From assembly GCF_037042905.1 (NCBI RefSeq), contig NC_087248.1:13888001-13952000 (forward strand): 64,000 nucleotides of DNA, read 5' to 3'. Shown here one piece after another: positions 1 to 29,005 of the stretch (position 1 is the first letter of the stretch; every line of letters starts with the position of its first letter). The position numbers were made by a program, and so were the translations under genes. The stretch is from Lytechinus pictus. Lineage: Eukaryota. The notes under the pieces were generated by a model, which had not been told where the DNA came from, ran no database searches, and saw only the letters and a program-made list of their open reading frames with translations.

Positions 1-20
1 TAAAAAAAAAAAACACGATA

Positions 21-1885
21 TGATTATGACAAGATGAAAATTGTCCAACTTTTTCCCGCTACTTTAATTTACAATTATGCAGTAAATTATCAGAGACTTA
101 GGGGTTGTTGCAAGAAAATATTTGCGATCAATTGCAAATATTCTGTTGCAATTTTACAACTGATAGATCAACGTTAGTTATAGCAAATAAGATTAAACTT
201 CTTGTTTCAAGGAGCAGATTAGCAATCAATCACTAATCTGCAATTAACTGTAGGACATATGATAGACTTTCAGTTGATCGCAAGTTTCTTGCAACACCCC
301 ATAATTCAGTTACACTTATTGTACAAGTGATTGTATACCGTATATATTTCTATGCATGGTTGAGACGGGTTAAATATTTATATAGTGACGAGATAAGATT
401 ATGACATGACAGGATGATAATTATTAAAGGATATTTTACAATAAACATATGACAATATAATATAACAAGATTGTATTAAGATAATACGACAAGATAGGGT
501 AAGATCAGAGGATAAGATCATGCAGATTAAATGGCAAGATAAGATAAGATAGCCTAACATAACAAGACTACAAGATAAGATGATATGACGAGACAAGAAA
601 AAGACACGGTCGAGAGTCTGTAAGAAGGCCATGAAATAGCGTTATTTTCTCCGAAGTCCGGATTTCGTCTGGAATTCTTTATAATGTAATATGTTGTTTG
701 TATTTATCCAAGTTTTTAACCTAGGCTGACTTCATTTTGTGTGAGCTATTGTGGAAGAGGGTGAGAGTTATAAACTGAGGAAGGTGTGCGTGTGTTTTGC
801 AGGTGGGTGTGTGAGTTGGGGTATACTCGGGTGCGTGCGTGCATGTGTGCAAGTTTATATTTTTTATTCAAATTTTTCGAACTTAATATTTCTATTCTTT
901 TTTTTTTCAATCATTGCCTCACTCTTCTTTGGAGTGTACGGGAAATTGTGGCTCTAATTGGTGATGAATTATTTATTCCCCATATCCCAATATGATATTG
1001 GGTAAAAAGCTCTTATGGGGCACTGAAATGCAAATCAAGCAAAAGTCTTTTGATTGAATGCAAAATCTGCATCTCAACTCTCTTCCAATTAACTTCCATT
1101 ACTATTGATTTTGGACTTAGCTTAATATGATTGACAAGGTTTACTCTTTTAACGTTTGCACACACACACATACACCCGCCCTCACACACACACACACACA
1201 CCCCCACACACACAAATTTAATATAACGCCATGCAAAAGAGAAGAAAAGCTAGACTATGATTGTGTTGTAAGGTTACTTTTTTTTCTTGAATTTCAATAC
1301 ATCATAGTTGCATGTATAATATGGGATAAACCTGACAACAGGAAGTATTATGACATAGTGTGATTACGTATAAAAAGATATTATTATGACTAGATAAAAT
1401 TGTCAAACTTTTTCCCGCTACTTTAAGTTACAATTATGTAATAATGGATTATCAGAGAATTATACACTTACGCTTATTGTACAAGTGACTGTATGGTTAA
1501 GACAAGTAAAGATATCATGACGAGATTAGATTATGACGACAGGGTAATTCCGACAAGATATTTTATATTTATATATGACAATATAATATGACAAGATGAC
1601 ATGACGGGATAATAGGAAAAGATAGGATAAGATCACAAGATAAGATAACAGGATAAGCTCAGATCAAATGGCAAGATAAGATAAGATAGCCTAATAACAA
1701 GATAAGATAAGATGACGAGATAAGGTCCCAATATAAGACACATCTAGGGTCTGTAAGAAGGCCCTAAAATAATTCTTTATTATGTTGTTGGTATTTATCA
1801 AAGTTTGTGACTTGAACTGACTTCATTTTGTGTGAGCTATTGTGGAAGAGGGTGAGAGTTATGAACTGATCAAAGTGTCCGTGTG
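21..1885. repeat. Old local direct duplication (~21-790 vs ~1380-1885) containing (ATAAG)n-like and (GT)n simple repeats
   Basis: Shared blocks such as aactttttcccgctacttta and tgtgagctattgtggaagagggtgagagttat. Confidence 0.75.
101..300. mobile_element. MITE
   Basis: TIRs ggggt(t)gttgcaagaaa / tttcttgcaacacccc. Absent from the duplicated segment at ~1380-1480. Confidence 0.7.
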
Positions 1886-2139
1886 TTTGTGTGCATGGTG
1901 CGAGTGTTACGCGCGCTGGTGCGGAGGGTATGTGAGTTGGTGTATAGTGGGGTGTGGGTGTGTATGTGTATAAATGACTATGCGGTAGGGTGGTGTGGGT
2001 GGATGCGATTTGGGCTGTATTACGTATTATCTCGAGTCAATGCGAATCTAACTCAACTAAATGATGATAAACAGCGAGGTTGAAATGGGAAGCAAAATGA
2101 ACCATTCAACAAATAATTTCTAAAAAAGAATCCGATGGT

Positions 2140-3393
2140 TTATGAGTTTGGTGAAAGTTCAGGATTCCCTTTTCCATGAAGATGTATGTAACACACGGTC
2201 GTAAACACAAGTCCAATAGCTAGAAATGATATTATGGAAATTATGATGGCGACGATTTTCTTTACATTTTGTACCCATTCATAAAAAAGTTTCTTGACCA
2301 AAGTGCAATTAGCACTTGGCCCTATGGAAGCTGCAAATTTGCGTAGTTTGGAGGTTTGTTTCGGTGGTAACGTTGTGATTTCAGCTTGCGTTGACGTTGA
2401 AGCAGTTGGCACACTCAAGACCAATTTGGCACAATTCAAAATTGTAGAATAGTTGGAAACCTCAATGAACGATGTACAAGTATTCAGGTCTCCGAGTACG
2501 TTCAACGTTCCTGTGATGTGGACGTTTGGTTTTTGATGAGAGTTATGTTTACAGAGGAACTCTGTGTGATTCTCAAAAGAAGGAATATATAACAATCCAG
2601 TATCATTGTCTTGGATATGGAACCATATTGGATGTGTTTTTCTATTTCCATTGCAGCGTTCAAACACTATCTTATCTTTATTATTTAGAGAGTCCATTGG
2701 TTCTTCAAAAGAAGCAACCCTACACGTCTGGTTTATCATATTCTTTCTATATGTCACCCTGCTTGGTGAATTGTTTGTGTGAAACAATATTTTTTCAAAA
2801 TTTAGAAGCAACGTGAAGCTATTTTCAGAATTGTAAATATCTTGATAATCATTGTCAGATGTTATATTGGAAAGATTCGTTTTCATTTCATCCTCATCCA
2901 ATGGTTTGCAAGACATCGTGACTGTTTTAGTAGTATTCTGAAGAAGCTCTGTGGAAGGAGAGGGGTCGGTAACGGTCAAATTCAGGTTTAAAATGATACA
3001 TTTACTTCTTGATCTATCATGCAGCTTTATTACATGATGACCTGTGTCATTATTCTGAGCATCTTCAATGAATATTGTGACTTTGGTTTTATTTTGTATT
3101 TCTGGAATCAATTTGTAACGTTCAAGGCCGTCTTCCGATCCGGAGCACTGCAGATCATGGGTGCAGATCACTTCCCACATCCTCCCCCTTTTTCGCCATA
3201 ATAGCGAATGGTTCTTGCCGAGTGGTAGATTTAGATATAGACTGAGAGAAACATTCTGCCCTCTGACGACACTTAACGTTTTATCTTCTCTGGGTGCACA
3301 GCTACTACTAGCTGATACAAATGTAAGCTGCCATACCATAAGACCAAAGAGCAGCATCTTCCATCCAAGTTTGACAGTATCCTGACGATGCAT
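2140..3393 (-). CDS. Intronless type-I membrane protein with N-terminal non-canonical V-set Ig-like domain; short cytoplasmic tail (Ig receptor copy A, ~417 aa)
   Basis: ATG at 3393 (the ORF track starts at an upstream TTG). Signal peptide (MLLFGLMVWQLTFVSA), V-set hallmarks (GQNVSL, LLWRK, ERYKL, IFIEDAQNNDTG), many NxS/T sequons, S/T-rich stalk, TM helix IVAIIISIISFLAIGLVFTTVCY, ~15-aa tail. Paralog of 5357-7456. Confidence 0.8.
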   Translation of the reverse strand: MHRQDTVKLGWKMLLFGLMVWQLTFVSASSSCAPREDKTLSVVRGQNVSLSLYLNLPLGKNHSLLWRKRGRMWEVICTHDLQCSGSEDGLERYKLIPEIQNKTKVTIFIEDAQNNDTGHHVIKLHDRSRSKCIILNLNLTVTDPSPSTELLQNTTKTVTMSCKPLDEDEMKTNLSNITSDNDYQDIYNSENSFTLLLNFEKILFHTNNSPSRVTYRKNMINQTCRVASFEEPMDSLNNKDKIVFERCNGNRKTHPIWFHIQDNDTGLLYIPSFENHTEFLCKHNSHQKPNVHITGTLNVLGDLNTCTSFIEVSNYSTILNCAKLVLSVPTASTSTQAEITTLPPKQTSKLRKFAASIGPSANCTLVKKLFYEWVQNVKKIVAIIISIISFLAIGLVFTTVCYIHLHGKGNPELSPNS

Positions 3394-3553
3394 TGTCAAT
3401 GGATAAGACTCAGAGATGCGAAATTATAACCCTATTGATCAACGTCGATTCGTGAAATAATCACATATTTTTCTGGATTCAAAACAGCGTAAGTCATTAG
3501 CATGATGCTGGTAGTGAATAGTAAAAGTAAATCCTTCAAGTATATATCGAGTA

Positions 3554-3863
3554 CAGAAGCGGATCTAGAGGGGGTGTTGGGGGGGTTGCAACCCCCCCCC
3601 CCCAAAAAAAAAAAAAAAAAAAAAAATCCGGGGACCATTTTTTTAAATCTTATCTTTTTTTTAAACTTGTAATTTTATTAGATGCAAGAAAACGCCATTT
3701 TCACACACAGATTTTCAAAAAATTTCCCTATTGTGGGAGGGGGAACACCCCCCTCCCACACCCTCCCCCCTCGCTCGCTCCGCTCGCTTGGACTCGGTCG
3801 CTACGCTCCCTCGCATACCACCCCAACCCCCCCCCCCTTTATAAAAAGCTGGATCCGCCCCTG
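3554..3863. mobile_element. CAG-ended MITE with 5-bp TSD, just upstream of Ig copy A
   Basis: cagaagcggatct... / ...ggatccgcccctg, with GAGTA on both sides. Confidence 0.7.
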
Positions 3864-5356
3864 GAGTATGCATGTTTTCCTCACAGTCATTAACATAGAC
3901 TTTTGAAAGTGAACCATGTAGGCGGACGACTTTGAAAAAGAAAATGCGATTGGCTACAAATTACAAGTAGTCACGCTGGATGGCACTGGTTAGTTCTTCT
4001 TTGCGATGAGTCAAAACAGCGTATTCAAAATCGAAAGAGCGCGTCGACCAAATCGAAAGTATGCAACAGGTAAAATGCTCCGCCATTGGAAAGAAAAGCT
4101 CATGCCCTCGTGAAGTATATTGAAACTTAGTATTGTTTCGAAGATTTTGGTCCTTGAAGAACTACCTTAAACAATATACTGAAAATCGTCTAAACAATCA
4201 AATTAATCTAGATAAAGAGCTCCATTCTGGTTTCCAATTGTCTCTTGACCGATTAACCATATATAGGGATGCTCATTGGACGTGTTTGAATGTTTTATTG
4301 ACAATTTGATCTGTCTACATGTACCTAAGGCGTGAACTGGTCCATTAATATCTTAATGAATTTGAAATGAATATTTGATTGTTTTGTTTTAATGTCTTGG
4401 AACCTTTCTCAGAGGCTTTATCAACCATAAAATTTACGCTGAAATCATTGGCTACATTTTGATATTATACACTTTTTTTCTTCAGATCCGCCACGCGAAA
4501 AAAAAAAATGCTGTCAACAGTGATAAGAAAAACTAAAAATAACCGTGTGTAGATTTATGTTACTCCCTCAACGAAAATTTTCCATTGTTTTTGCAAGAGA
4601 TGATTGGTATTAAAATGATTTTTATGGTTTGAATCCGAAAGACAATAAACATCTCTACCACATCAATCATACTAATCGGTTTTGTGATAGATATAACAAC
4701 CGTGAAGGTCTCGTATACAAGACAAATGTACTTGTTTGTATGTAATTATTTGAAGGAGGGTGTCCAACAATATACTTCAATATGTCAAAATTTATCAATT
4801 CAAAGCAGTCTATTTGATATTTTCTGTCACTTCACCTGCTTGTGACACTGTCATGTCCCGGGGACGTTCTTTCATAGGTAGTGTATCCTTCTGATACTGT
4901 CCTGCCATCTATTATCTAATTGTCTTTTGATTGGTTCGAGTACTATTGCTTAAACTTATAGCGGACGAAACAAGAAATGTGGGTACAAGAAAACAAACCA
5001 AACTTTTCAATCAGTTGTAGGACAAACACTTTTATTTAGATTTTTGTTGAGCTATAGCAGAAAAACACTGATCAAGTAACTGGCGACCAAGCACCATTTG
5101 TATTTTTCGTATCAAACTTTTTTACAACATGCGTGGATTACTTCCAATGGAGTGATAATGATTGAAGGGGATACATTAATTCCATACATACTTCAGGACA
5201 TGTCATTTCTTGAACATCCACATAATGCTAAATAATTTAGGTGACTTAGAATGATATTGCACACCTTAATAATTCCAAGGAACTGTTGATCAAATAATTA
5301 AATACGATAGTAACAATGCTTCTCTGAATCGACTTGTCTGAAAATTATAATTCACA

Positions 5357-7456
5357 ATGCGTCACCACCATAGCTTGACACTTGGATGGAAAATGTTGTT
5401 CTTTGGACTTATGTTGGATCAACTTACATTTGTATCAGCTAGTAGTAGCTGTGTACCCAAAGATGATAAAACGTTAAGTGTCGTCAGAGGGCAGAATGTT
5501 TCTCTCAGTCTATATCTAAATCTACCACTCGGCAAGAACCATTCGCTATTATGGCGAAAAAGGGGGAGGATGTGGGAAGTGATCTGCACCCATGATCTGC
5601 AGTGCTCCGGATCGGAAGACGGCCTTGAACGTTACAAATTGATTCCAGAAATACAAAATAAAACCAAAATCACAATATTCATTGAAGATGCTCATAATAA
5701 TGACACAGGTACTCATGTAATAAAGGTGCAAAGCGGAACAAGAATCAAGTGTACGATCTTAAGCCTGAATTTGACCGTTACCGACCCCTCTTCTTCCACG
5801 GAGCCTCTTCAGAATAATAGTAAAACATTTACAATGTCTTGCAAACCATTGGATAAGGATGGCATGAAAACGGCTCTTTCCAATATAAAATCTGACCATG
5901 ATTATCAAGATATCAACAATTCTGAAAATAGCTTCACGTTACTTCTAAATTTTGAAGAAATATTGTTTCACACAAATAATTTTCCAAGCAGGGTGACACA
6001 TAGAAAGAATATGATAAACCAGACGTGTAGGATTGCTTCGTCAGGAGAGCCCTTATACCCTCTGAATGATAAGGATAAGATAGTGTTTGAACGATGCAAT
6101 GGAAATAGGAAAACGCATCCAATATTGTTCCATATCCGTGACAATGATACCCGATTATTTTATAATCCTTTTTCGGAGAATTACACAGAGTTCCTCTGTA
6201 AACATAACTCTCATAAAAAACCTAACGTCCACATCAGAGGAACGTTGAACGTACTCGGAGACCTGAATACTTGTACATCGTTCATTGAGGTTTCCAACTA
6301 TTCTACAATTTTGAATTGTGCCAAATTGGTATTGAGTGTGCCAACTGCTTCAACGTCAACGCGAGCTGAAATCACAACGTTACAACCACAACAAAACATA
6401 TCTACAACCCCTACAAAAATGTCGGCAGAAACTATCAGTACAGAGAAAGGAGGTGATGAACAACAATACATAGTAATTTTAATCTCAGTTGCATCAATAT
6501 CCGTCATTGCACTTGGATTCTCAGTTGCCTCGTGTTTTTACAAATACAAATTAGTAAGCGGAAGAGGAAACCTTACTGACCATCGAATGAACTTCAAAGC
6601 TGCACATCAGGATGCAGAACCTGTCCAAAGCAATTCTTCTCAGGATTTGTCGCAACACGGTAACAGGGGAACTGTGATATCAGAGAATCCGATTGAAGCT
6701 TCAAGTGACAAAGGAAAGCATGGACATGGTCCAGCTTCATCTGGATGTCAGAGTGAAACTCACGCTAACGAACCACATTCGACACCCTCAGGGTCTGTCA
6801 AGGATCACACCAGACTTCGAGGATTGCCTGATCTTGGGGAAGCAGCTACTTCTACCGACAAGGTGTCCAATAATAAAAACACTCATGTTGATTATTCAGA
6901 AACTATCTATTGCTCTTTGGATGGTTCTGAAGACGAGGGTAACGCTGAAACACGGCCCCCACTTCAATGTTTATCGAGTTCGTTGTTGAGTAGATATGAC
7001 GCCCAATGTGAAGAAGATGCTCCAGATGTAAAGAGTCCTCCTTCGTCACCTAAGGACCTTGGGGATCGGATTGAGCTAAATAATCCCTTTTATGGAGTCA
7101 TTCCTCTACCTTCATCAGGTAAGTCAGATGACCTGACTAGAAACGAAGGAAATCATTCCCTTTCTGACAAAGAATTGCCGTCCTGTATTGCACATACAAA
7201 TACAGGAGGAAGGAATGCGTCGGCCTGTAGTGTCCTGGTGAGGCCAGAAATCGAAGCCTTGTATGCCAAACCCGACAAAAACCGAAAGAAAAAACAGTCA
7301 GATGCTCTTTTAGCCTTGCCCAATTCTTGTCAAGCGGAGTCGACCATTGTAGACATGGATTGCTATTATGTAAACGTTCCGGCAGCCAACAATTCAAGAA
7401 GTTCTACTACGATTGTTACTCGAAAGAGTGATTGCATATATGAATCCTGTGATTGA
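5357..7456 (+). CDS. Intronless type-I membrane Ig-like receptor with ~300-aa cytoplasmic tail carrying tyrosine motifs (Ig receptor copy B, 699 aa)
   Basis: Single ORF: signal peptide, ectodomain paralogous to copy A, TM YIVILISVASISVIALGFSVASCFY, then a low-complexity tail with TIYCSL, NPFY, LYAKP, YYVNV and IYESC. Confidence 0.85.
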   Translation: MRHHHSLTLGWKMLFFGLMLDQLTFVSASSSCVPKDDKTLSVVRGQNVSLSLYLNLPLGKNHSLLWRKRGRMWEVICTHDLQCSGSEDGLERYKLIPEIQNKTKITIFIEDAHNNDTGTHVIKVQSGTRIKCTILSLNLTVTDPSSSTEPLQNNSKTFTMSCKPLDKDGMKTALSNIKSDHDYQDINNSENSFTLLLNFEEILFHTNNFPSRVTHRKNMINQTCRIASSGEPLYPLNDKDKIVFERCNGNRKTHPILFHIRDNDTRLFYNPFSENYTEFLCKHNSHKKPNVHIRGTLNVLGDLNTCTSFIEVSNYSTILNCAKLVLSVPTASTSTRAEITTLQPQQNISTTPTKMSAETISTEKGGDEQQYIVILISVASISVIALGFSVASCFYKYKLVSGRGNLTDHRMNFKAAHQDAEPVQSNSSQDLSQHGNRGTVISENPIEASSDKGKHGHGPASSGCQSETHANEPHSTPSGSVKDHTRLRGLPDLGEAATSTDKVSNNKNTHVDYSETIYCSLDGSEDEGNAETRPPLQCLSSSLLSRYDAQCEEDAPDVKSPPSSPKDLGDRIELNNPFYGVIPLPSSGKSDDLTRNEGNHSLSDKELPSCIAHTNTGGRNASACSVLVRPEIEALYAKPDKNRKKKQSDALLALPNSCQAESTIVDMDCYYVNVPAANNSRSSTTIVTRKSDCIYESCD

Positions 7457-8197
7457 CTCCCGTTGATGATATAACTCGGCCTATTGGCACATTCCTCTAT
7501 ACTTGATAACTAATTGATAACCAATTAATGTAACTAATAATGTAAGGATGACGCTATGGCATTTCGATAGACGATAAACGACCTATTAACGTCTTATTTT
7601 CCTTAGTTTGAACTAGACGGGATATAGGCATGATAGGATAGTATACTTATACGACCCATGCGGACCTCTGTTTGGGGCACTCATCCGTCTTCTGTCTTCA
7701 TCTTCTTTTTTATTGGGAGGAGTGCGTCTTTTTCTCCTTTTTTCATGACTAATTAATAAAAATCATAGGGGTCGCCCGCAACATGTCCCTAGCATGTGGC
7801 GCCGCCAAACCAATTCGCATAATCATGCACTATTTTGTGAAATAAGTCATCGCTATTGTATGATGTGTTCATTGCTGGAATGCTACTATGCTTTTTTTGG
7901 CGTAAGACAATATTCCTCGATAAATGGTAGGCCCTAAAGCAATGATTGTGATCGTAATGTCGTCTGAATTGTCGCATGTTGAATAGCTATTCTTCATGAT
8001 ATGTGTTAATGTATGTTATAAGTAGAGGACACTGTAGCCTTATGTAAGAGACATTCCATCTCGTAAGCCGAATGACTTTGGAAGCGGATTGAATTACGAT
8101 GGATAGAAACGTGGTTTGGTCAATAAAAGAAAATGCACATTATTGTTTTTTTCGACATGTCGTGGGATAACATACTAATGCCATACATGTATTATAG

Positions 8198-8523: not shown

Positions 8524-8753
8524 CACTAGCGTACCTACGGGGGGGGGGGGCAGGGGGGCACTCTGGTACGAAATCCTTTATTTGTGATCGAAGACCTTTT
8601 TTTTTTTTTTTTTTTTTTTGCTTGTCAATTTTTTTTCTGGTACGAAATCCTTTATTTGTGATCGAAGACCTTTTTTTTTTTTTTTTTTTGCTTGTCAAAT
8701 TTTTTGGCGGACGGTTTTGCCCCCCCCTGTGGAAAATCCTAGGTACGCCACTG
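8524..8753. mobile_element. hAT-like MITE with 8-bp TSD
   Basis: cactagcgtacct / aggtacgccactg, TSD CCTGGGGC at 8516-8523 and 8754-8761. Confidence 0.8.
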
Positions 8754-15200: not shown

Positions 15201-16432
15201 AGAGAAACTGATTCGAAAATGAAAGAGCTAGAAAGAGAAATAAAGGGATGGCCAGCGAAAAAAAGAGAAGGAGAAAGGAAGATAGATCAAGTTAAAGAAA
15301 TAAAAGGTCGAGGAAGAGAGAGGGGAGAGTGAGATAGCATCAAAGAGAAAACAGATGTACATAGTGCCGTATTAAGCTAATATAGGCCTAAATGATGATG
15401 AGCATACGCCATACATCGGACTTTAGTTTGTACAATGCTGTGAATTTTAGTACTGAAAAAAGATTACATGAACAATTAGGGGATGTGTAGTGCGAATGAG
15501 GCTTTTAAAAAGGGTCATTATAGTCCGAACTGTTGGCCAAAAAATTAAAAAAATAAAATAAAACGAACAAACAAATAAATCATCAGCACTAAAACTGTTG
15601 GCCTTTTCTTCCCGAAAAAAAACTGTTTTCCTTCCCCATGTTCCCTAATTTCTCTTGCTTTTAAAACTGATCGAACCACAGCCTATGTATCAATTCAGCG
15701 GAACGAAGACGTTCTTTCATAAGTAGTGTTGCTTAAACTTAAAGCGGACGAAATGAGGGTACAAGAAAACAAAGCAAACTTTTCAATCAGTTGTTGAAGG
15801 ACAAAGACTTATTTAGTTTTTGTTGAGCTAGCACACAAACACTGATCAAGTAACTGGCGACCATGCACCATTTTTTTTTTCGATTTAACTCTTCTACACC
15901 TTGCTTGGATTACTTCCAACGGAGTGATAATGATGGAAGGGAATACAACCACTCTACTTCAGGGTATGTTATTTATTGAACATCCACATAATGCTAAATA
16001 ATTTTACTTGGTGACTTGGAATGATATTGTACACCTTAATAATCCCTGTAATAATTCCAAGGAACTGTTGATCAAATACTTGAATACGATAGTAACAATT
16101 TTTCTCTGAATCGATTTGTCTGAGAATTGTAATTCACAATGCGTCGGCACCATTAAGGCCACCGCACACCTAACGACCCGACTGGTCGGCGACTGGCTTG
16201 CGACTGAGAGAGGGGAGATGAATCGCAAGGCAGTCATAAGCCTCGACACCGCACATCTTGCGATCCGATCTGCGACTCACGCATGCGCTTTTTGCTTTTT
16301 GGCATAGCATCTGAGAAATTGCGCTTACTACTGCGTATGCGCGTTGTTTATCATAATACGCATCGTGCAACTCTGCTGTGTGATTGGCTGGAAGTTGGAT
16401 TGAGCTTGCGATCCAGTCATAAGGATTCGACA

Positions 16433-19143
16433 GTGCAGTGCTGACCAGCTACACCTTCTCTATACTCTTCCTATGGAACAAATATCAAAGAACCTTTTCT
16501 ATAATCTTCCTGCAATGTGCTTGGATCCGACTCAAATCGACCTGCTGCTTGATCAACTTAGCGAAGAAATGTTGAAGGTATCACTAACTCTACCACACTC
16601 GAAGGGCCGTCAGAAAAGAAAAAGGAAAGGGAAAAGAGAGTGGACCAAAAAGGTAGAGGCATGTTATAAACAATCTCAATATTACTGGCGTCTCTGGAGG
16701 GCCAGCGGAAAACCAAAAGGCAAGGACCCTCTCTGGATCAAGCATGTATATACAAAACGTCTATTTAGAAGTAGCATCAGGCAAGCACGGCGGATGTATC
16801 ACAATAATCTCCTTTCAGAAATTGAGGATGCTAAAGGTAGCAATGATAAACTCTTCTATAGGCTTGTCAAAAGCACTAAAGGATCTCGGTCCACTGATAC
16901 ACTGTCTTATAGGGGTACAACATATGAAGGAGAGGCAGTTTTAGATGGCTTCAACTCACATTTCTCAGATCTTGCTAAACCGGATTACATGAATGCCTCT
17001 TCTCCGCCTGAATTGGATGAAGCTATTCCCACTCGCCCGTTCCAGGAAAATTTGAATCAACCACTTCAACCCTCTACTTCAAAAGATCTAGATGAAGCTA
17101 TTAATTCTCTCAAGAAACAAAAAGCTGCAGGACCTGATAATATATCTCCTGAGCATCTTATATATCTTGGCCCAATAGCTCGGAAATTACTTCTCGCCCT
17201 CATCAATCGATGTATATCCCTAAAGTATATTCCTGAACCTTTGAAGTCCGGCCTTATAGTCCCAGTTCACAAAGGAAAGGGAAAAGATGTAAAAGATCCT
17301 TCTAACTACCGAGGCATAACAGTTTCTTCAACAATTGGTAAAGTTTTGGAAATGCTCATCAAATCTCAACTAGAAATTCCACTCGCAATAAATGATGTCC
17401 CAGACCAGTTACAATTTGGATTCCAGAAAGGCAAATCTTGCCTCCTTACTGCATCTTCACTGGAATTAATAATCCAACTGAACTCTGCCAAGAAATGTAC
17501 AACATACCTTGCTCTTCTCGACGCACAGAAAGCATTTGACATCGTTTGGCATAAAGGCCTATTTTCTAAGCTTCAAAACCTAGGCCTCCATGAATCCCTG
17601 TTATCTACACTGGAAGAGTTCTACAACGGTAGTACCAGTAGAGTCATGTGGGAAGGAAAAGTCAGCTCTCCTTTTCAAATCCTTCAAGGTGTAAAACAGG
17701 GGAGTGTGCTCTCTCCCACCTTATATACAGTCTTCATCGATGGCCTGATCAAATCACTAAGGAACGCTTGTCTTGGATGCTCTATTAATGGTTGCTACAT
17801 GGGAGTGATAGTACTAGCAGATGACGTTGCTCTAATCAGTACATGCCCCCGAGAACTCCAATCAATGCTGGATCTCACCTTCTCTTATTCCTGTGATTGG
17901 AGATATAAAATTAATCCACAAAAAAGTGCCGTAGTAGTAATAAACAAAAAAGCATCAACCAGTGTAAGTTCAGTCGAGTGGAAAATGGGAGGAATGACAA
18001 TCAAGGAAAGCAGAGAGCACCCACACCTTGGCATAGTAAAAAGCAATTGTAATATTGACCATACCAATAACATCATTTCAAAGGGATATAACACCTTCTT
18101 CTCTCTCACTGGAACTAAGCAAGGAACTCTACGCCTGCTGCCACCAATATGTACTCATCTTTGGAAAATGTTCTGCATACCAAGAATGCTATATGGGATT
18201 CAGATTATTCAACTTACCAACTACATGCTGTCCCGTTTGAACAAGGCCCAAACATTTCTTTTTAAAAGAGTGCTTGGTTTGCCAAGGAGTGCGGCGGACG
18301 AAATTGTTTATTTATTGCTCGATATCCTCCCAATGGATAAGCGAATCGACTATGAAATTCTTCTCTTACTTGGGCAATATGCAAGCCTTTCAGACGAACG
18401 CACTGAGAGAAGAATCCTGTTGAATGGTATAGCATACAATACACCTTTGGTAAGACGCTGGATAAAAATCCTCAATAGTTATGAGCTTCCAAGTCTCCCT
18501 AACATCCTTAGAGATCGCATTCCATATAAAGTATGGAAGAAGCTAACACTGGGAAAAATTTATAAACAACACTATGCTGCCCTTGAAATTGCAATTGCTA
18601 AAAAATCTTCTCTAAGTCTATGGTCGGGCATGACCCAACGTGATAAAAAGAATTATTACCCAAAGCAAGTCTCCAGCCCTCTCCTGAGGGAAGCTATGTC
18701 CATCAGAGCTCAATTATCCTGCAGTACATACCCAACGAATAGAAGGTTATTCTCTCTGAATCAAAGTACCACAAAGTCCTGCAAGTTCTGCCACTCCGAA
18801 CTGGAAAGTGTTGTACATTTTGTTGGAGAATGCCCAGCGTTTAGCACACACAGGAAAACCCTTCTAAACTTAATAAAAGAAGACGAGGAACTGCAGTATT
18901 TTTCTGTGCATTTCAAAGATCAAGAACCTCAACAATTTACCGCTTCCGTCCTGTTTCTTCCTGACGTCGAATTAGCAGATTCCTCCAGAAACGACCTCAA
19001 CCTACTTGTCTTAAATTTCTTGCATAAGATTCACCTCTCTCGATCTACCTTACTCTCACGTCAAAATATGTAACGCTAATGTTAATGCAGTATTAAACTG
19101 CGGATCTCCGATACAGCGGAGGAAGGATACAGAAGAAGAAGAA
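16433..19143 (+). mobile_element. 5'-truncated non-LTR retrotransposon (RTE-X-like LINE)
   Basis: Contains the RT ORF and a 3' (GAA)n tail ending ~19143. Apparent GACA duplication at 16429-16432 and 19144-19147. No APE endonuclease domain, so 5' truncated. Confidence 0.8.
16473..19073 (+). CDS. LINE ORF2 reverse transcriptase with C-terminal CCHC zinc finger (endonuclease missing)
   Basis: RT motifs KAAGPDNI, NYRGIT, QFGFQKG, LDAQKAFD, GVKQGSVLSP, LADD, HLG, plus CKFC...ESVVHFVGEC. Uninterrupted 866 aa. Confidence 0.92.
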   Translation: MEQISKNLFYNLPAMCLDPTQIDLLLDQLSEEMLKVSLTLPHSKGRQKRKRKGKREWTKKVEACYKQSQYYWRLWRASGKPKGKDPLWIKHVYTKRLFRSSIRQARRMYHNNLLSEIEDAKGSNDKLFYRLVKSTKGSRSTDTLSYRGTTYEGEAVLDGFNSHFSDLAKPDYMNASSPPELDEAIPTRPFQENLNQPLQPSTSKDLDEAINSLKKQKAAGPDNISPEHLIYLGPIARKLLLALINRCISLKYIPEPLKSGLIVPVHKGKGKDVKDPSNYRGITVSSTIGKVLEMLIKSQLEIPLAINDVPDQLQFGFQKGKSCLLTASSLELIIQLNSAKKCTTYLALLDAQKAFDIVWHKGLFSKLQNLGLHESLLSTLEEFYNGSTSRVMWEGKVSSPFQILQGVKQGSVLSPTLYTVFIDGLIKSLRNACLGCSINGCYMGVIVLADDVALISTCPRELQSMLDLTFSYSCDWRYKINPQKSAVVVINKKASTSVSSVEWKMGGMTIKESREHPHLGIVKSNCNIDHTNNIISKGYNTFFSLTGTKQGTLRLLPPICTHLWKMFCIPRMLYGIQIIQLTNYMLSRLNKAQTFLFKRVLGLPRSAADEIVYLLLDILPMDKRIDYEILLLLGQYASLSDERTERRILLNGIAYNTPLVRRWIKILNSYELPSLPNILRDRIPYKVWKKLTLGKIYKQHYAALEIAIAKKSSLSLWSGMTQRDKKNYYPKQVSSPLLREAMSIRAQLSCSTYPTNRRLFSLNQSTTKSCKFCHSELESVVHFVGECPAFSTHRKTLLNLIKEDEELQYFSVHFKDQEPQQFTASVLFLPDVELADSSRNDLNLLVLNFLHKIHLSRSTLLSRQNM

Positions 19144-19334
19144 GACATGTCAAATCCTTCCGATTTTCCTTGCGACTTGTCTCTGACCGGTCTGCGACTC
19201 GAAGCTGACAAGAGCTGTGACGTCACATCTCTCCTCACCCAGTCGCAAGCCAGTCGGCGACTGGTCGGGTCGTAAGGTGTGCGGTGGCCTTAACACTTGG
19301 ATGGAAAATGCTGCTCTTTGGACTTATGGTGTAC

Positions 19335-20096
19335 CCGGCCCCCACACACAGTGTTATTTAGGGTACGTTTATGTTCGTTCCCTCTCTTTGAAAGCACCCC
19401 CTATCTCATGTCTGCCAAAATTTCTGAACCCCCCTTTCGCGGGCTTTTCGCGGGCATTTCCTGCCTTGGAGACCCCCCTAAATCCGGAACACTGCTCAAT
19501 GTACCCCCTTTCTCAGGTGAGCTCTCATTCCTACCCCATATCTCAGGACAGACACCCCCCCCCCCCCCACTTTATATCAGGTAAGCTGTCAAGCTGTCAT
19601 ATATAGGTTTCCTGATGTCATGATGGAGGACAAGCTTTCAAAACTAGCAGGAATGTCAGGAATTTGATCCCGGCAGGAGCCGCGGAACGGTTTTCAAATT
19701 TGGGGGGGGGGGGGTGACCATGCAAAAAATCACAATCATATGGTCATTTTGAGCCAAAAGTGGGGGGGGGGCTGACAATGCAAAAAATCACAATCATATG
19801 GTAATTTTTACGTTTTTGTACATGGTTTTGAAAAAAGGGGGGGGCTGAAGCCCCATCCCCCCCCCCCCGCTTCCGCGGCCCCTGCCGGGATTTGATCATT
19901 TATTTCTATGATATTCAAGATATTCTATAACCCCCTTTTTTATTTCCCAGGAGTCCAAAAATTAAGAGAGAGAAAAATACCTCCCCTTTTTACAATTCGC
20001 GGGCCGGACTTGTCCCCCGAAAAAGTACCCCTTTACCGGACATTTTGGGAACATGCATGCGGTCCCTTCGACCCCGGAGTGGGGGGGGGGGGCGGG
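19335..20096. mobile_element. Non-autonomous DNA element with 9-bp TSD (Mutator-like TSD length), itself containing a CAGG-ended MITE (~19674-19884)
   Basis: ATGGTGTAC duplicated at 19326-19334 and 20097-20105. C-rich and G-rich complementary termini. Interrupts the Ig pseudogene signal peptide. Confidence 0.75.
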
Positions 20097-20979
20097 ATGG
20101 TGTACCAACTTACATTTTTATCTACTCGTAGTAGCTGTACACCCAAAGAAAATAAAACTTTAAGTGTCGTCAGAGGGCAGAATGTTTCTCTCAATTTATA
20201 TCTAAATCGGCCACTCAGGGGGGCGGTAGGGGTGGTCGCCCCCAAAAAGAAAAAAAGGAAAAGGAGAAAAACAAAAAGCGAAAAGGGAGGAAAGGCATAG
20301 CTTTGTTGTTTTTTCCTTCTTTTTTTGTCAAAAGAATAATAACCTAAACGAAACGTTGATCTTCTCTCTTCATACAAAATTTTGCTTCCGTGCGGGAAAT
20401 ATATCGAAAGCGCCTTCACCCTTTGTTCCCTACACCTTTTTTCTACTCCGTTTTCCCCTTCTCGGCTGTGGGAATCTTATATTTTTGCCAGAAATTATAA
20501 ATTATACATGGGTGTATAAGAGTATGAAAAGTACCTTTTTTTATTGCATTGACACAAAATGTCGGCTCTTCTGTTCGGAGTGGGTAAACGTTACCGTCAC
20601 TTCCCGACTCCCCAAATGAAATTTCTTTGGCTTTTCAGCAAGCAACTATTGGCAAAGTATATCTACCCAAAGGGGGAGGCATTAAATTCGTGCCGTGCAA
20701 TATGCAAAAGTATGTACGATATGAAACTTTATACTAAATCGCTGTACATCCATCTCCTGTCTTGTTTTGTGCCATTGATTCAAAATGTTATAATCACTGA
20801 AAAGGAAGCGCTTAATTTGAGCGAAATTACACAATTTTGTTTCTTGTAAAATAAATCACAGAGGTTTCCGTGCTTCACGAGCACGGGAAAAGGGAACTAA
20901 GTCCCTCTTTTAGCTTCTAGCTTGCATCATCCCTTTCACATTTTGAGCTCGTCTTTCTTCTTAATCGGGTTATAGTCTA

Positions 20980-22085
20980 TGTGACGTTTAAGTCTCATTA
21001 ATTTGTATGTCCCTCGTTAGCAAGTCACAAAATCAAACCGAGTTGCGATACCAATTGTTGAACTCTTGAATGCATGGTTCGACCTGCAGTTTAATGAAAC
21101 AATAAACAATCATAAATTGAATGTCATGAAAAACTTGTACAATTGTCGAATGTAGCGTTAATAATCCAATACCTATACATTCACAAAGCCTTTAAATTGT
21201 ACACGAGTCTAAGACATCAACTGACCAGATAATCTAACAACTGTCCTTATTTGTTTCTTATGTTGTTATCATAAAGCTCTCAATTACCGGTATTCATCAT
21301 TAGGCTGCATCCGAAATAAATAACTACAATAACAAACCATTTTGTAAATATAACCTCAACTGAAACATCAAGGTATGATTAAATTCTCACATTTGTTTCT
21401 CATATCCAAAATTCTATATTAAAAACACATTCAGCCATGCCTAAGGCTACAGAAAATATGCCCCTAGCAAGGCATCCCTAGGTTAGCTTGTAACCTTTGA
21501 CCTACTTTCAGTCATACCACTTGTGCATGACTATTATGACATAAATTACCACTATTATCATAAAGGCATGAATTATCATCACTAACAAACTTCATGCAAT
21601 TATGTACCATTTACTTTTCATATCTTATGTAAATAAACGTTTACTAGCTTAAATCAACACACGTGCGTGCTGCGGTCAAGTTTCGCGCACTACACACACA
21701 GTATTGTACTTATACATATGTACATAGACACACCGAAACTTTCACTGAACATGAGCGATAATTCATACAACTTTTGTAACAAAATTTTCACCAAAATATT
21801 CATCATTTAAATCATTTCTTAATACAAACTATCAGTCAACTATTCTTTTTCATATAAACATCTATTTTTAGAATACTTACAACATTGGGCTTGGTCAAAG
21901 GGCAAAATAACGATGACAACAAATTAGCAAGTGTTCCCAAACCAAGTAAAAACATGGGGGACAAAATACAACGCCCTCTACCGATTGGCAACAAAAACCT
22001 ACGCTTCTGACGTCACCGAAACTTTGTGACCCGGAAACGATATGTAAATTTCACACTATAACCACTTTGCATCGTACACTCTACA
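20980..22085 (-). repeat. 3' LTR (~1.1 kb) of the BEL/Pao element
   Basis: On the minus strand a purine-rich PPT (tttagggggccggaa, 22086-22100) is followed by TGTAG at 22085. The LTR ends ...ACGTCACA at 20980, next to the TSD. No second direct copy exists to confirm the U3 boundary. Confidence 0.7.
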
Positions 22086-22402
22086 TTCCGGCCCCCTAAA
22101 TGTGAAGCCTATACAGCTGAACATTTACAACATAATTAAATATTAGCACATCATCTTTACATGTGTTACACAATTTCCAAAACAATCGCTGCATGCTTAG
22201 TATCTTACACACGACTTGTGCATTAAATATTTACACCTTCTTTTGCTAGAAATCAAATGGACATAAATTTGCATAAATCAACTCCAAAATGAAGACAAAT
22301 GTCTCCCTTGCATACACTCATGCAACTTCTTTGTTAATGAGAATTCTCATCAAAAAGACAATATTGTGGCATTCTTATTCTACAGCTACAGTAACATATT
22401 TA

Positions 22403-22441
<39 letters not shown>

Positions 22442-23518
22442 AATATATATATCAAATCATAATTTGGTTCATTCTTCATCTTGAACCTGAAATAAACAAT
22501 AATGCATCCTTTCAAATTTTGAGTGAAATGTTATACTGCAATAATCTTCTCTGTAATACAAGGCAAATACTCCTTTTAAATATATACAAATTAACACAAC
22601 GTTCAGTTTGTACAAATTACTACGAAAAATGCAAACATCATTCATAAAACTAACCAAAGTGGCTTGATATGATGCAAAGGAGTCCAATTTCTCAAACTGG
22701 ACTAGATATGAGACAATTCTGCTGCTTGTAAAGTTTTACCTCCTCTAATTATGTTTTAGAAAAACCTTTTATTATAGTCTTTTAATTCTATCACAAAATC
22801 ATATTTGTCAAACTATAAATTCACCTCTTAAACAAACATTGTATATTTGACACCTGAATGCTTCCTGAATTCAGCTTTCCTTACAACAAACACATTATTG
22901 TATAAAGGAATTTTCAGTCACAAATTTGCAATAACATGCACCTGTTTCTTGTGTAATCATACTGAGTAAATCTTTCACATATAAATCAGAAAGTCCACAT
23001 TTACAACATGTATGAATAATTGTTCACTGTTTCTTTAAAGAGGGAGGGAAAAGTTCTGAGTTCAATGTTCAGCAGTGGGTCAAACTTGAAGCTCACAGAT
23101 TGTAAGAGTTTAATAACATTTTAGAGTTCAGGTTAAAGTTCATTCTGACTCTGGAATTCTCTCTCTGAATAAATTCTTCTGCAAATTTCTCCAAAACAGT
23201 CACTTCTCTGTTGTAGAGTTCTCTGAGCGAAATGATTGAAATATTATAAATTCTCTCAAATTCTTCTTTTCAAACAGTCTTGGCTGGATAAATTGCTCAA
23301 AAGAAAAAGATAATTGTTCAATATCACAGATAAACTATGCTTCTTCATCTGGGTTGATCCACTAATACCGATTGCTCCAAATATCTCGTTGGCTCAAATA
23401 GCAAATGCTCCAAAATTATTAATTTCAAATATATAAGAGGCAGCGCTTGGCTTGCACCTCATCACAACATATTTCATATTTCCTAGCTGTTGTGATATAG
23501 ATTCAATTCCACAAATTT

Positions 23519-28450: not shown

Positions 28451-29005
28451 TCAAGAGTTCAACAATTGGTATCGCAACTCGGTTTGATTTTGTGACTTGC
28501 TAACGAGGGACATACAAATTAATGAGACTTAAACGTCACAGTCTAAGAAATCTCAAAATTGTAACAGGTTAAAGTTTTAGAGAAATTTCTAAAGTTCAGA
28601 GCTTCAACGCCATTCGCGGGAAGGAATAGGGCCTATTTCCTTCCTGCATACCCGTCTTCTACTCTGTTTTGCGACTTGAGTTAAGTTGAGTTAACGAAAT
28701 CTATATAAAATCTGATGTGACCATGCAAGGTAGGCATTTTATACCACTTATGTTCTCAATTTATATAAAACGTTTTAGCTTCCGCGCTTTGCGCGGTAAG
28801 AAGAATTATTTTGAATTCCTCAATCTTTTCCTATTTTGGGGGCGCTAATAATTTCATGATTTACAAAACATGAAAAGAGTGTCCCGTTTTAGGACTATTT
28901 TTTCCGCTCGCGCTTCCCGCTCGTATTAATTATGTACTTATATACCTGTCCTGTTCATGATTACAAAAAAGTGTTTAGAATGCCCCATTTTTAAGTCAGA
29001 AAGAC

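What the first reader, a model, noticed from the sequence alone, without database searches (positions are those of the whole stretch)
2140..7456. Candidate invertebrate paired-receptor system: head-to-head intronless Ig receptors with shared ectodomain but long tyrosine-motif tail vs almost no tail
Seen: two divergent single-exon genes ~1.96 kb apart with highly similar ~335-aa signal + ectodomain regions. The stalks do not align and the TM segments are only distantly similar. Copy B has a ~300-aa tail with several Tyr motifs; copy A ends ~15 aa after the TM. A third copy lies ~9 kb downstream of copy B. Established: vertebrate paired receptors (KIR, LILR, SIRP, CD300, CEACAM) and Hydractinia Alr genes share this logic of similar ectodomains, alternative tails and clustered birth-and-death evolution. 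Inference: an undescribed immune, allorecognition or adhesion receptor family. Copy A has no charged residue inside its TM (only KK just before it), so it may be a decoy or ligand rather than a classical activating receptor.
Basis: partly seen in the sequence, partly recalled or inferred. Interest (0 to 1): 0.85.

Follow-up and report, generated by a model that had tools for sequence, protein, structure and literature searches.

The report
Sea urchin Ig receptor gene pair
Two neighbouring, oppositely oriented sea urchin genes encode surface proteins whose outer parts are kept almost the same by DNA copying, while one has a long tyrosine-motif signalling tail and the other almost none; they belong to an undescribed urchin-only Ig receptor family and resemble vertebrate immune "paired receptors", but I found no firm evidence that either gene is expressed.

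Summary
Copy A (2140-3393, minus strand, 417 aa) and copy B (5357-7456, plus strand, 699 aa) are intact single ORFs lying head to head. They share a 1046-bp ungapped inverted repeat at 90% nucleotide identity (83% amino-acid identity) covering the signal peptide and ectodomain. Beyond it, the stalk, membrane anchor and tail share no detectable DNA similarity.

The first domain is a V-set Ig fold that lacks the canonical disulfide. Domain 3 is weakly Ig-like and domain 2 is unresolved.

The genes belong to a small family seen mainly or only in sea urchins: 17 representatives among 1.84 billion proteins, one of them a fish V-set protein that is not a member. The only named member is an "uncharacterized" Lytechinus pictus protein. 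In that species the family is tandemly clustered and each coding sequence is a single ORF.

Long tails carry conserved tyrosine motifs. Short-tailed members also occur in what is probably another sea urchin.

A 204-nt identical tract inside otherwise diverged arms indicates ongoing gene conversion.

The "third copy" is only a dead 5' fragment broken by mobile-element insertions.

Three RNA-seq runs showed no reads on either gene, and neither protein is in public protein collections.

My reading is a paired-receptor-like system, closest in logic to Siglec-5/14, without the charged-anchor rule for the short partner. Function and expression are unproven.

Other first-stage notes of this scan already cover this same stretch (s1-317613, s1-317742).

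The parts
2140..3393 (-). Copy A coding sequence, including its stop codon: 417 aa comprising signal peptide, ectodomain of about 350 aa, stalk, membrane anchor and a 15-19 aa tail.
   Evidence: ORF list; hydropathy; family HMM E 6e-113.
5357..7456 (+). Copy B coding sequence, including its stop codon: 699 aa comprising signal peptide, ectodomain, stalk, membrane anchor and a cytoplasmic tail of about 305 aa.
   Evidence: ORF list; hydropathy; family HMM E 7e-113.
2355..3400 (-). Inverted-repeat arm in copy A, from 7 bp before the ATG to codon 346.
   Evidence: blastn: 1046 bp, 90.2% identity, no gaps.
5350..6395 (+). Inverted-repeat arm in copy B.
   Evidence: blastn. Overall dS 0.174, dN 0.086; signal-peptide part dS 0.65.
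5465..5668 (+). 204-nt tract identical between A and B (codons 37-104; the copy A counterpart is 3082-3285). It is read as a recent gene-conversion tract.
   Evidence: Per-site comparison; permutation P < 1e-5.
5447..5791 (+). Domain 1 of copy B (aa 31-145; copy A counterpart 2959-3303). It is a V-set Ig domain without the canonical B-F disulfide. The A/B differences cluster around the predicted F-G loop (aa 124-135).
   Evidence: Family profile against PDB sequences: 153 hits at E <= 1; the 60 listed are all Ig-domain proteins, nearly all V-set, best 1.4e-5. AF2 pLDDT 71-90. Foldseek to PD-1: TM 0.75, rmsd 2.7 A. Pfam V-set is below its cut-off. Residue comparison.
5792..6394 (+). Domains 2 and 3 of copy B (aa 146-346). 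Domain 3 is weakly Ig-like; the fold of domain 2 is unresolved.
   Evidence: Domain 2-3 profile against PDB: TCR-alpha V, DIP and DCC Ig domains at E 0.002-0.08, on the domain 3 part. AF2 pLDDT below 40. hhalign between the domains was negative.
6467..6538 (+). Membrane anchor of copy B (aa 371-394).
   Evidence: Kyte-Doolittle 2.62.
2188..2256 (-). Membrane anchor of copy A (aa 380-402). It holds no charged residue; KK lies just before it.
   Evidence: Kyte-Doolittle 2.84; weak similarity to copy B's anchor, shuffle P 0.004.
6902..6919 (+). Tail motif TIYCSL (Y518), which is ITIM/ITSM-like. In relatives it reads SxY[CS]SV.
   Evidence: Motif table across 8 long-tailed members.
7259..7288 (+). 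Tail motif LYAKPDKNRK (Y636), conserved in all 7 long-tailed members that reach this far.
7367..7378 (+). Tail motif YVNV (Y671), of the pYxN type that Grb2 SH2 domains bind. Relatives have LY[VIM]N near the C-terminus.
   Evidence: The binding preference comes from general knowledge and was not tested.
7436..7453 (+). C-terminal IYESCD (Y695), identical to the end of homologue P0001.
3394..5356 (.). 1963-bp spacer holding both upstream regions. The copy A side carries a dispersed repeat at about 3540-3870. Copy B's upstream 430 bp is shared with the relic copy but not with copy A.
   Evidence: Sequence; blastn; RNA reads fall only on the repeat.
15708..20216 (+). Dead third copy: 5' flank plus codons 1-58 in three pieces (15708-16153, 19289-19331, 20097-20216). 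It is split by a LINE (16154-19288, RT ORF 16473-19073) and by a 765-bp insertion with a 6-bp overlap at its edges.
   Evidence: blastn and tblastn; Pfam RVT_1; family HMM hit on the last piece only.

Best explanation
Copies A and B are two members of a family of type I membrane receptors known so far mainly or only from sea urchins. Members have a V-set Ig domain, about 200 further extracellular residues that are probably Ig-like, one membrane anchor, and usually a long tail.

Copy B is the standard long-tailed form. Its tail keeps four tyrosine motifs that are conserved in paralogues 30% identical or less: an ITIM/ITSM-like S/TxYxx[VL], LYxKPDxxRK, a YxN motif, and IYES. It most likely signals by tyrosine phosphorylation and recruitment of SH2-domain proteins (inferred).

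Copy A is an older paralogue. Its stalk and anchor have diverged beyond DNA recognition and its tail is reduced to about 15 residues.

Repeated gene conversion between the inverted arms keeps the ligand-binding ectodomains of the two genes alike. This is shown by the mosaic of divergence: dS is 0.65 over the signal peptide, 0 over 204 nt, and about 0.19 elsewhere.

The expected outcome is two surface proteins that bind the same or similar ligands, only one of which can signal. Copy A would act as a non-signalling competitor or decoy, or would signal through an unknown partner. This is the logic of vertebrate paired receptors such as Siglec-5/14, reached independently and without the charged-anchor/adaptor rule.
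For: Anatomy of the pair:
- ORFs and repeat arms.
- Mosaic divergence and a 204-nt identical tract, permutation P < 1e-5.

Ig fold:
- V-set by family profile, by Pfam in 6 of 13 members, and by AF2 plus Foldseek.

Family:
- Membership, with the L. pictus named member.
- Three tandem single-ORF genes in L. pictus.
- Tail motifs conserved across members.
- Short-tailed homologues (the P0007 cluster) are intact in 7 contigs from different runs. They have a real stop codon followed by AT-rich sequence and an AATAAA.

Constraint on the pair:
- No indel in 1046 bp, and dN/dS 0.50.
- Copy A's C-terminal part weakly resembles family stalks and anchors, z about 3.
Against: - No RNA reads on either gene in three 2026 RNA-seq runs, each about 25% sampled. 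Only one 225-nt low-depth contig, in a run of uncertain type, touches copy B's tail.
- Neither protein is in a 15-billion-protein collection.
- Copy A does not share copy B's upstream region.
- Copy A's open frame is only weakly improbable under neutrality: P 0.16 for 50 substitutions.
- dN/dS of 0.5 fits a constrained copy B paired with a neutral copy A.
- There is no charged anchor residue in copy A.
- Domains 2 and 3 are not resolved.
- The motif-to-SH2 link is inferred from vertebrate knowledge.
Confidence: 0.5

Rival explanations
1. Copy A is a functionless by-product: a truncated duplicate or decaying paralogue that stays open only because gene conversion from the functional copy B keeps refreshing its 5' kilobase. 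On this view the 'pairing' has no biological role.
For: - No expression was detected and the gene is not annotated.
- Copy A's upstream region differs from copy B's.
- The locus demonstrably makes dead copies, as the third-copy relic shows.
- A pooled dN/dS of 0.5 is compatible with a neutral copy A.
- P(no stop) is 0.16 under neutrality.
Against: - Copy A's unique 71 codons lie outside the conversion tract. They are still open, encode a strong membrane anchor followed by basic residues, and weakly resemble family stalks.
- There is no indel in 1046 bp.
- Tail-less members are intact in another species across 7 samples.
- Both genes have a Kozak-like context and a downstream AATAAA.
Confidence: 0.3
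2. Both genes are functional, but as adhesion, gamete-recognition or developmental surface molecules rather than immune-type paired receptors. The similarity of the arms would then simply reflect the mechanics of an inverted repeat.
For: - V-set domains and phosphotyrosine tails also occur in adhesion molecules: nectin, JAM, CAR, MXRA8 and myelin P0 are among the fold and profile hits.
- No immune expression data exist.
Against: - Clustered, fast-diverging families with a single-ORF coding sequence, pseudogenes and ITIM-like motifs are more typical of immune or recognition receptors.
- The best fold matches are PD-1, TREM1, NKp44, CD300 and 2B4. This is weak evidence, because V-set folds are all alike.
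Confidence: 0.15
3. The inverted pair is an assembly artefact, for example two haplotypes or paralogues joined wrongly.
For: Sea urchin genomes are highly heterozygous. The best DNA run holds only 12% of copy B's sampled words.
Against: - The arms differ by 10% in a mosaic pattern.
- The flanks on both sides are entirely different, and each gene ends in its own coherent anchor and stop codon.
- There are no N runs in the window.
- The low word share fits runs of less than 1x coverage.
Confidence: 0.05

Closest known systems
Vertebrate paired receptors whose ectodomains are homogenised by gene conversion (Siglec-5/Siglec-14, Siglec-11/16; more broadly KIR, LILR, PILR, SIRP, CD300). This comparison rests on general knowledge.
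   Same: - Adjacent genes.
- An N-terminal V-set ligand-binding region kept nearly identical by gene conversion.
- The membrane-proximal, anchor and tail parts are unrelated.
- One partner has a long tail with an ITIM-like tyrosine motif and the other a very short tail.
   Different: - There is no sequence kinship beyond the Ig fold.
- The short partner has no charged anchor residue, and no DAP12- or FcRgamma-type adaptor link is evident.
- The coding sequence is a single ORF.
- Domain 1 lacks the canonical disulfide.
- Expression and ligands are unknown.
Hydractinia Alr family (Huene et al. 2022, PMC9546547)
   Same: - An invertebrate, clustered, fast-diverging IgSF family with pseudogenes.
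- An atypical V-set domain 1 that standard motif searches nearly miss.
- Further domains recognisable only with difficulty.
- Cytoplasmic ITAM or ITIM-type motifs in some members (abstract).
   Different: - A different phylum and no detectable sequence relationship.
- Alr genes have introns and alternative splicing.
- An allorecognition role is shown genetically for Alr1 and Alr2, whereas nothing functional is known here.
CD2/SLAM family (CD2, CD48, 2B4)
   Same: - An N-terminal V-set domain without the canonical disulfide.
- Tails with TxYxx[VI]-type motifs (copy B has TIYCSL).
- The family includes a tail-less member (CD48).
- CD48/CD2 and 2B4 are among the profile and fold hits.
   Different: - The hits are no better than those to many other V-set proteins (E 2e-4; TM 0.71).
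- The ectodomain here is about 315 aa, not V plus C2.
- Membership is not supported.
Lytechinus pictus LOC135153983 (XP_063955053.1) and its two tandem neighbours
   Same: - The same family by profile (E 6e-15).
- The same architecture and a single-ORF coding sequence.
- The same tail motifs.
   Different: - Only about 20-25% identical to A and B.
- All three are long-tailed and arranged in tandem on one strand, not a head-to-head long/short pair.

Membership tests
Immunoglobulin superfamily, V-set domain (domain 1) | Sequence match to V-set profiles. | tested here: met
   On single sequences Pfam V-set is below its cut-off (15.8 and 14.8 bits against 26). However, 6 of 13 family members hit it, best E 5.4e-5. 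The family profile hits 153 PDB sequences at E <= 1; the 60 listed are all Ig-domain proteins, nearly all V-set, best 1.4e-5.
Immunoglobulin superfamily, V-set domain (domain 1) | Nine-strand V-type beta sandwich. | tested here: met
   AF2 with a 23-sequence alignment gives pLDDT 71-90 over aa 31-145 with 9 strands. Foldseek matches PD-1 at TM 0.75 and rmsd 2.7 A, probability 1.0, with 500 or more hits.
Immunoglobulin superfamily, V-set domain (domain 1) | Canonical B-strand to F-strand disulfide and the DxGxYxC motif. | tested here: not met
   The motif reads DTGTHVI, and the B strand reads VSLSL, without a cysteine. The conserved cysteines are instead C32 and C132. The invariant tryptophan (W66) and the RY.L and D.G motifs are kept.
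Immunoglobulin superfamily (domains 2 and 3) | Ig-like fold or profile match. | tested here: inconclusive
   Domain 3 has weak profile hits to TCR-alpha V, DIP and DCC Ig domains, E 0.002-0.08. Language-model neighbours are C1-set and C2-set clusters at 0.86-0.88, which is a lead only. AF2 pLDDT is below 40 and hhalign between the domains was negative.
Paired receptors (vertebrate sense) | Closely linked genes with highly similar ectodomains. | tested here: met
   The genes are 1963 bp apart. The ectodomains are 83% identical in amino acids and 90% in nucleotides over 346 codons, and there is a gene-conversion tract.
Paired receptors (vertebrate sense) | One partner with an ITIM in a long tail. 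| tested here: inconclusive
   Copy B has TIYCSL. Relatives have SVYCSV, SAYSSV and STYCSV, which fit (S/I/V/L)xYxx(I/V/L). Phosphorylation and phosphatase recruitment were not tested.
Paired receptors (vertebrate sense) | A short-tailed partner with a charged anchor residue that couples to an ITAM adaptor. | tested here: not met
   Copy A's anchor, IVAIIISIISFLAIGLVFTTVCY, has no K, R, D or E. The short-tailed homologue P0007 has a histidine in its anchor.
Paired receptors (vertebrate sense) | Both partners expressed on immune cells. | tested here: inconclusive
   Zero reads in three RNA-seq runs from unknown tissues, and one 225-nt contig on copy B's tail in a fourth run.
Sea urchin receptor family defined here (LOC135153983-like) | Profile match over the ectodomain plus the conserved tail motifs. 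| tested here: met
   HMM E about 1e-113 for A and B. Exhaustive search gave 17 representatives. Copy B keeps motifs M1, M2, M4 and YVN. Copy A matches in the ectodomain only.

The most novel reading that the evidence does not exclude
This would be a true invertebrate paired-receptor system that evolved independently of the vertebrate ones. A signalling long-tailed receptor and a tail-less decoy or co-receptor would have ligand-binding V-set ectodomains held together by ongoing gene conversion across an inverted repeat. They would belong to an undescribed sea urchin IgSF family used in immune or self/non-self recognition.
Probability: 0.3. Interest if true: 0.8.

Novelty: new variant of a known kind. 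Interest (0 to 1): 0.55.

Why it matters
Sea urchins are known for huge innate receptor families (TLR, NLR, SRCR). Ig-type receptors with opposing or decoy partners are, to my knowledge, essentially a vertebrate story.

This family has four relevant features: it is clustered, its coding sequences are single ORFs, it has a cysteine-less V-set domain, and it has conserved phosphotyrosine tails. It also contains a long/short pair tied by gene conversion. Together these would show that the paired-receptor design arises repeatedly.

It would also give an experimentally tractable echinoderm model: binding assays, tail phosphorylation, and knock-down in larvae or coelomocytes.

The case also shows how such families escape annotation. 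Neither protein is in public protein sets, and Pfam misses the domain on single sequences.

Tried and rejected
- **Word-indexed homology search.** It found only P0001, both with copy B alone and with a 13-sequence profile, because the candidate list saturated. The exhaustive HMM search was needed.
- **AF2 on a 3-sequence alignment.** It failed, with pLDDT 34.
- **Internal domain similarity.** hhalign of D1, D2 and D3 against each other found nothing.
- **Tail remnant downstream of copy A.** tblastn with 8 family tails and a tail HMM over six frames found nothing convincing. A weak DYDD-like match at 1475-1564(+) lies on the wrong strand inside a repeated element, so I treat it as chance.
- **Promoter homology between A and B.** None beyond about 7 bp before the ATG.
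- **Further family members in the window.** None.
- **Species.** The LINE ORF is 95% identical to a Lytechinus variegatus protein, while an earlier scan note calls this genome L. pictus. Exact look-ups of window proteins found nothing, and L001 shares no DNA with the window. I therefore say only Lytechinus sp.
- **Literature.** Three searches found no paper on this family.
- **Positive selection.** I considered it for domain 1 and do not claim it. dN/dS is about 0.8-1.0 over aa 105-145, but this rests on only about 18 substitutions.
Full report
**1. The observation**

The window holds two intact ORFs facing away from each other.
- Copy A occupies 2140-3399 on the minus strand. Its first ATG is at 3393, giving 417 aa.
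- Copy B occupies 5357-7456 on the plus strand, giving 699 aa.

A self-comparison of the DNA shows one ungapped inverted repeat, 5350-6395 against 3400-2355. It is 1046 bp long at 90.2% identity. At protein level this is 83% identity over 346 residues. The repeat starts 7 bp before the start codons and stops abruptly at codon 346.

Beyond that point a local DNA alignment finds nothing. The proteins there share only a faint resemblance over the membrane anchor and a G(K/R)GN just after it (score 40, shuffle P 0.004).

Hydropathy gives one strong anchor in each protein. Copy A ends 15-19 residues after its anchor, whereas copy B continues for about 305 residues. The window has no N runs.

**2. 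The 'third copy'**

Only fragments exist.
- 15708-16153 matches copy B's upstream 430 bp plus the first few codons, at 82.5% identity.
- 19289-19331 matches codons about 6-20.
- 20097-20216 matches codons about 19-58, at 86.7% identity.

The first gap holds a LINE with an open 866-aa reverse-transcriptase ORF (RVT_1, E 2e-30). The second gap is a 765-bp insertion whose edges repeat 6 bp of the gene. Nothing homologous follows codon 58, and the family HMM finds no other member in the 64 kb.

The third copy is therefore a dead relic. It does show that copy B's upstream region belongs to the ancestral duplication unit, while copy A does not share that region.

**3. What the proteins are**

Single-sequence Pfam gives only a sub-threshold V-set hit. 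The word-indexed search found a single relative, P0001 (572 aa, 39% identical, ending in the same IYESCD).

An exhaustive profile search of 1.84 billion representatives found 17 proteins at E <= 0.001.
- Two representatives carry source names. One is XP_063955053.1, an 'uncharacterized protein LOC135153983' of the sea urchin Lytechinus pictus, which belongs to the family. The other is a fish protein made of V-set repeats (E 5e-5), which is not a member and only links domain 1 to V-set.
- The rest are unnamed proteins from ENA assemblies or Logan contigs.

Evidence on the domains:
- **Domain 1, by sequence.** With a 23-sequence family alignment, the profile matches 153 PDB sequences at E <= 1. 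The 60 listed are all Ig-domain proteins, nearly all V-set (MXRA8 at 1.4e-5, CD48/CD2, pIgR, TIM-1/3, PD-1, JAML, Siglecs, Dpr, TCR-alpha), and the matches fall on domain 1. Six of 13 members hit Pfam V-set.
- **Domain 1, by structure.** AF2 now models aa 31-145 at pLDDT 71-90 as a nine-strand sandwich. Foldseek returns PD-1 (TM 0.75, rmsd 2.7 A), VH domains, CRTAM, nectin-1, PD-L1 and 2B4. In Swiss-Prot models it returns TREM1, NKp44, PD-1 and CD300.
- **Domain 1, motifs.** The domain keeps the invariant tryptophan, the RY.L strand and the D.G motif. It lacks both canonical cysteines; conserved C32 and C132 may substitute for them (this is an inference).
- **Domain 3.** It gives weak Ig hits: TCR-alpha V at E 0.002, plus DIP and DCC.
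- **Domain 2.** It gives none, although most relatives have cysteines about 60 residues apart and a C.V.H motif there.
- **Domains 2 and 3, other tests.** AF2 does not resolve them, and hhalign between the domains is negative. Language-model neighbours are C1-set and C2-set Ig clusters at scores that count only as leads.

**4. The family**

In L. pictus, the 22-kb locus around LOC135153983 holds three tandem, same-strand, uninterrupted ORFs of 583, 656 and 689 aa. All have a signal peptide, ectodomain, anchor and long tail. An earlier unchecked scan note (s1-327661) reports a six-gene array of similar single-exon Ig receptors 390 kb from this window on the same sequence piece.

Aligning the tails shows motifs conserved among paralogues that are otherwise 30% identical or less:
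- S/TxY[CS][ST][VL]D. Copy B has TIYCSL; relatives have SVYCSV, SAYSSV and STYCSV, which fit the ITIM consensus.
- [LM]Y[ASP][KQ]PD..RK, present in all seven long tails that reach it.
- HIY[GE], which is the C-terminal IYESCD in copy B and P0001.
- LY[VIM]N. Copy B has YVNV, the classical pYxN pattern bound by Grb2-type SH2 domains (general knowledge).

Such conservation inside otherwise low-complexity tails argues that copy B is a working phosphotyrosine-signalling receptor.

Tail-less forms are not unique to this window. The P0007 cluster (426 aa, 15-aa tail, a histidine in the anchor) occurs intact in seven Logan contigs from different runs. In the longest contig the stop codon is followed by stop-rich, AT-rich sequence with an AATAAA 42 nt downstream. 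Its short tail is unrelated to copy A's, so truncation has probably happened more than once (inference).

**5. History of the pair**

Divergence along the arms is a mosaic.

| Region | Divergence |
|---|---|
| Signal peptide | 20 differences in 90 nt, dS 0.65 |
| Codons 37-104 | 204 identical nt |
| Remainder | dS about 0.19 |

A run of 204 identical sites among 101 differences in 1038 sites never occurred in 100,000 permutations. This is the signature of repeated gene conversion of different ages laid over an older duplication, not of a single recent duplication.

Other points bearing on this history:
- Copy A's private C-terminal 71 residues weakly resemble the stalks or anchors of P0001, P0007, one L. 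pictus gene and copy B (z about 3). They are open and encode a strong anchor.
- I therefore read copy A as an old family member that lost its tail and whose ectodomain is kept like copy B's.
- Overall dN/dS is 0.50 and there is no indel in 1046 bp.
- Around the predicted F-G loop (aa 124-135) the two proteins differ most, VQSGTRIKCTILS against LHDRSRSKCIILN. The counts are too small to claim positive selection.

**6. What is missing**

- **Expression.** Reads were laid on three 2026 RNA-seq runs, each about a quarter sampled, and one older run. No read lay on copy A or copy B. Only the dispersed repeat at about 3540-3870 was covered. One 225-nt contig of depth 2.4 with five differences covers 7043-7267 in copy B's tail. 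The tissues are unknown to me, so this is absence of evidence.
- **Annotation.** Neither protein is in the 15-billion-protein collection.
- **Neutrality of copy A.** The test has little power: P(no stop) is 0.16 for 50 random substitutions.
- **Downstream of copy A.** No tail remnant lies within the 2.1 kb available. A distant spliced exon cannot be excluded, but it would be unlike every long-tailed relative.

**7. Comparison with known systems**

The mechanism I propose is that of paired receptors kept alike by gene conversion; Siglec-5/14 is the textbook case (general knowledge). The defining feature of the activating partner, a charged anchor residue coupling to an ITAM adaptor, was tested and is not met. 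Copy A is therefore better described as a candidate decoy, competitor or partner-dependent form.

The Hydractinia Alr family (PMC9546547) is the closest invertebrate analogue in style: an atypical V-set domain, clustering, pseudogenes, and ITIM/ITAM motifs. It is unrelated in sequence and differs in gene structure.

CD2/SLAM proteins share the cysteine-less V domain, ITSM-like tails and a tail-less member. The matches to them are no better than to other V-set proteins.

I found no paper on this family.

**8. Species**

The LINE ORF is 95% identical to a Lytechinus variegatus protein and 44-48% identical to L. pictus proteins. An earlier scan note calls this genome the painted sea urchin, L. 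pictus. I could not settle the question and say Lytechinus sp.

**9. Verdict**

- The Ig assignment is sound for domain 1.
- The paired-receptor reading is the best available model at about 0.5 confidence. The main rival, that copy A is a conversion-refreshed non-functional duplicate, stands at about 0.3.
- This is a new variant of a known kind, of moderate to good interest pending expression data.

Noticed in passing
window 3540-3870: A dispersed repeat with poly-C and poly-A runs lies in the spacer on the copy A side. It is the only part of 1700-7699 covered by RNA reads (word depth about 100 in X15). Reads carry variant forms, for example a 76-nt skip from 3706 to 3783 replaced by a C-run, and they run on into unrelated sequence, so the RNA comes from other copies elsewhere.
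   Followed up: partly
window 16154-19288: A LINE is inserted in the dead third copy. Its 866-aa ORF is open and has RVT_1 and zf-RVT hits but no endonuclease domain hit in Pfam. It is 95% identical to L. variegatus LOC121406831 over 45% of its length, which suggests a young element.
   Followed up: partly
window 19332-20096: A second, 765-bp insertion in the relic copy repeats 6 bp of the gene (copy B 5411-5416) at its two edges, like a target-site duplication. The element was not identified.
   Followed up: no
window 20975-28545: A BEL/Pao-type retroelement, noted by another first-stage finding, has an open 1643-aa ORF at 23519-28450(-). It lies just after the point where the relic copy ends.
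   Followed up: no
window 17-812 and 1377-1907: A direct repeat pair (87% and 71.5% identical pieces) lies downstream of copy A's stop. It is rich in short DKI/DKM-type periodic sequence. A weak DYDD-like match to a family tail motif at 1475-1564(+) falls inside it and is probably chance.
   Followed up: partly
window 8562-8705: A tandem duplication of a 74-bp unit (93% identical) lies about 1.1 kb downstream of copy B.
   Followed up: no
L001 2600-12070 (L. pictus CM073229.1, about 13.46 Mb): Three tandem single-ORF family genes of 583, 656 and 689 aa. Only the last was returned as a called gene in the locus table, so the other two may be unannotated.
   Followed up: partly
P0001 (UniParc UPI000222A274): The closest homologue has a copy A-like stalk and a copy B-like tail but no hydrophobic anchor between them. 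It is either a secreted or anchor-less form, or a gene model that skipped the anchor region.
   Followed up: no
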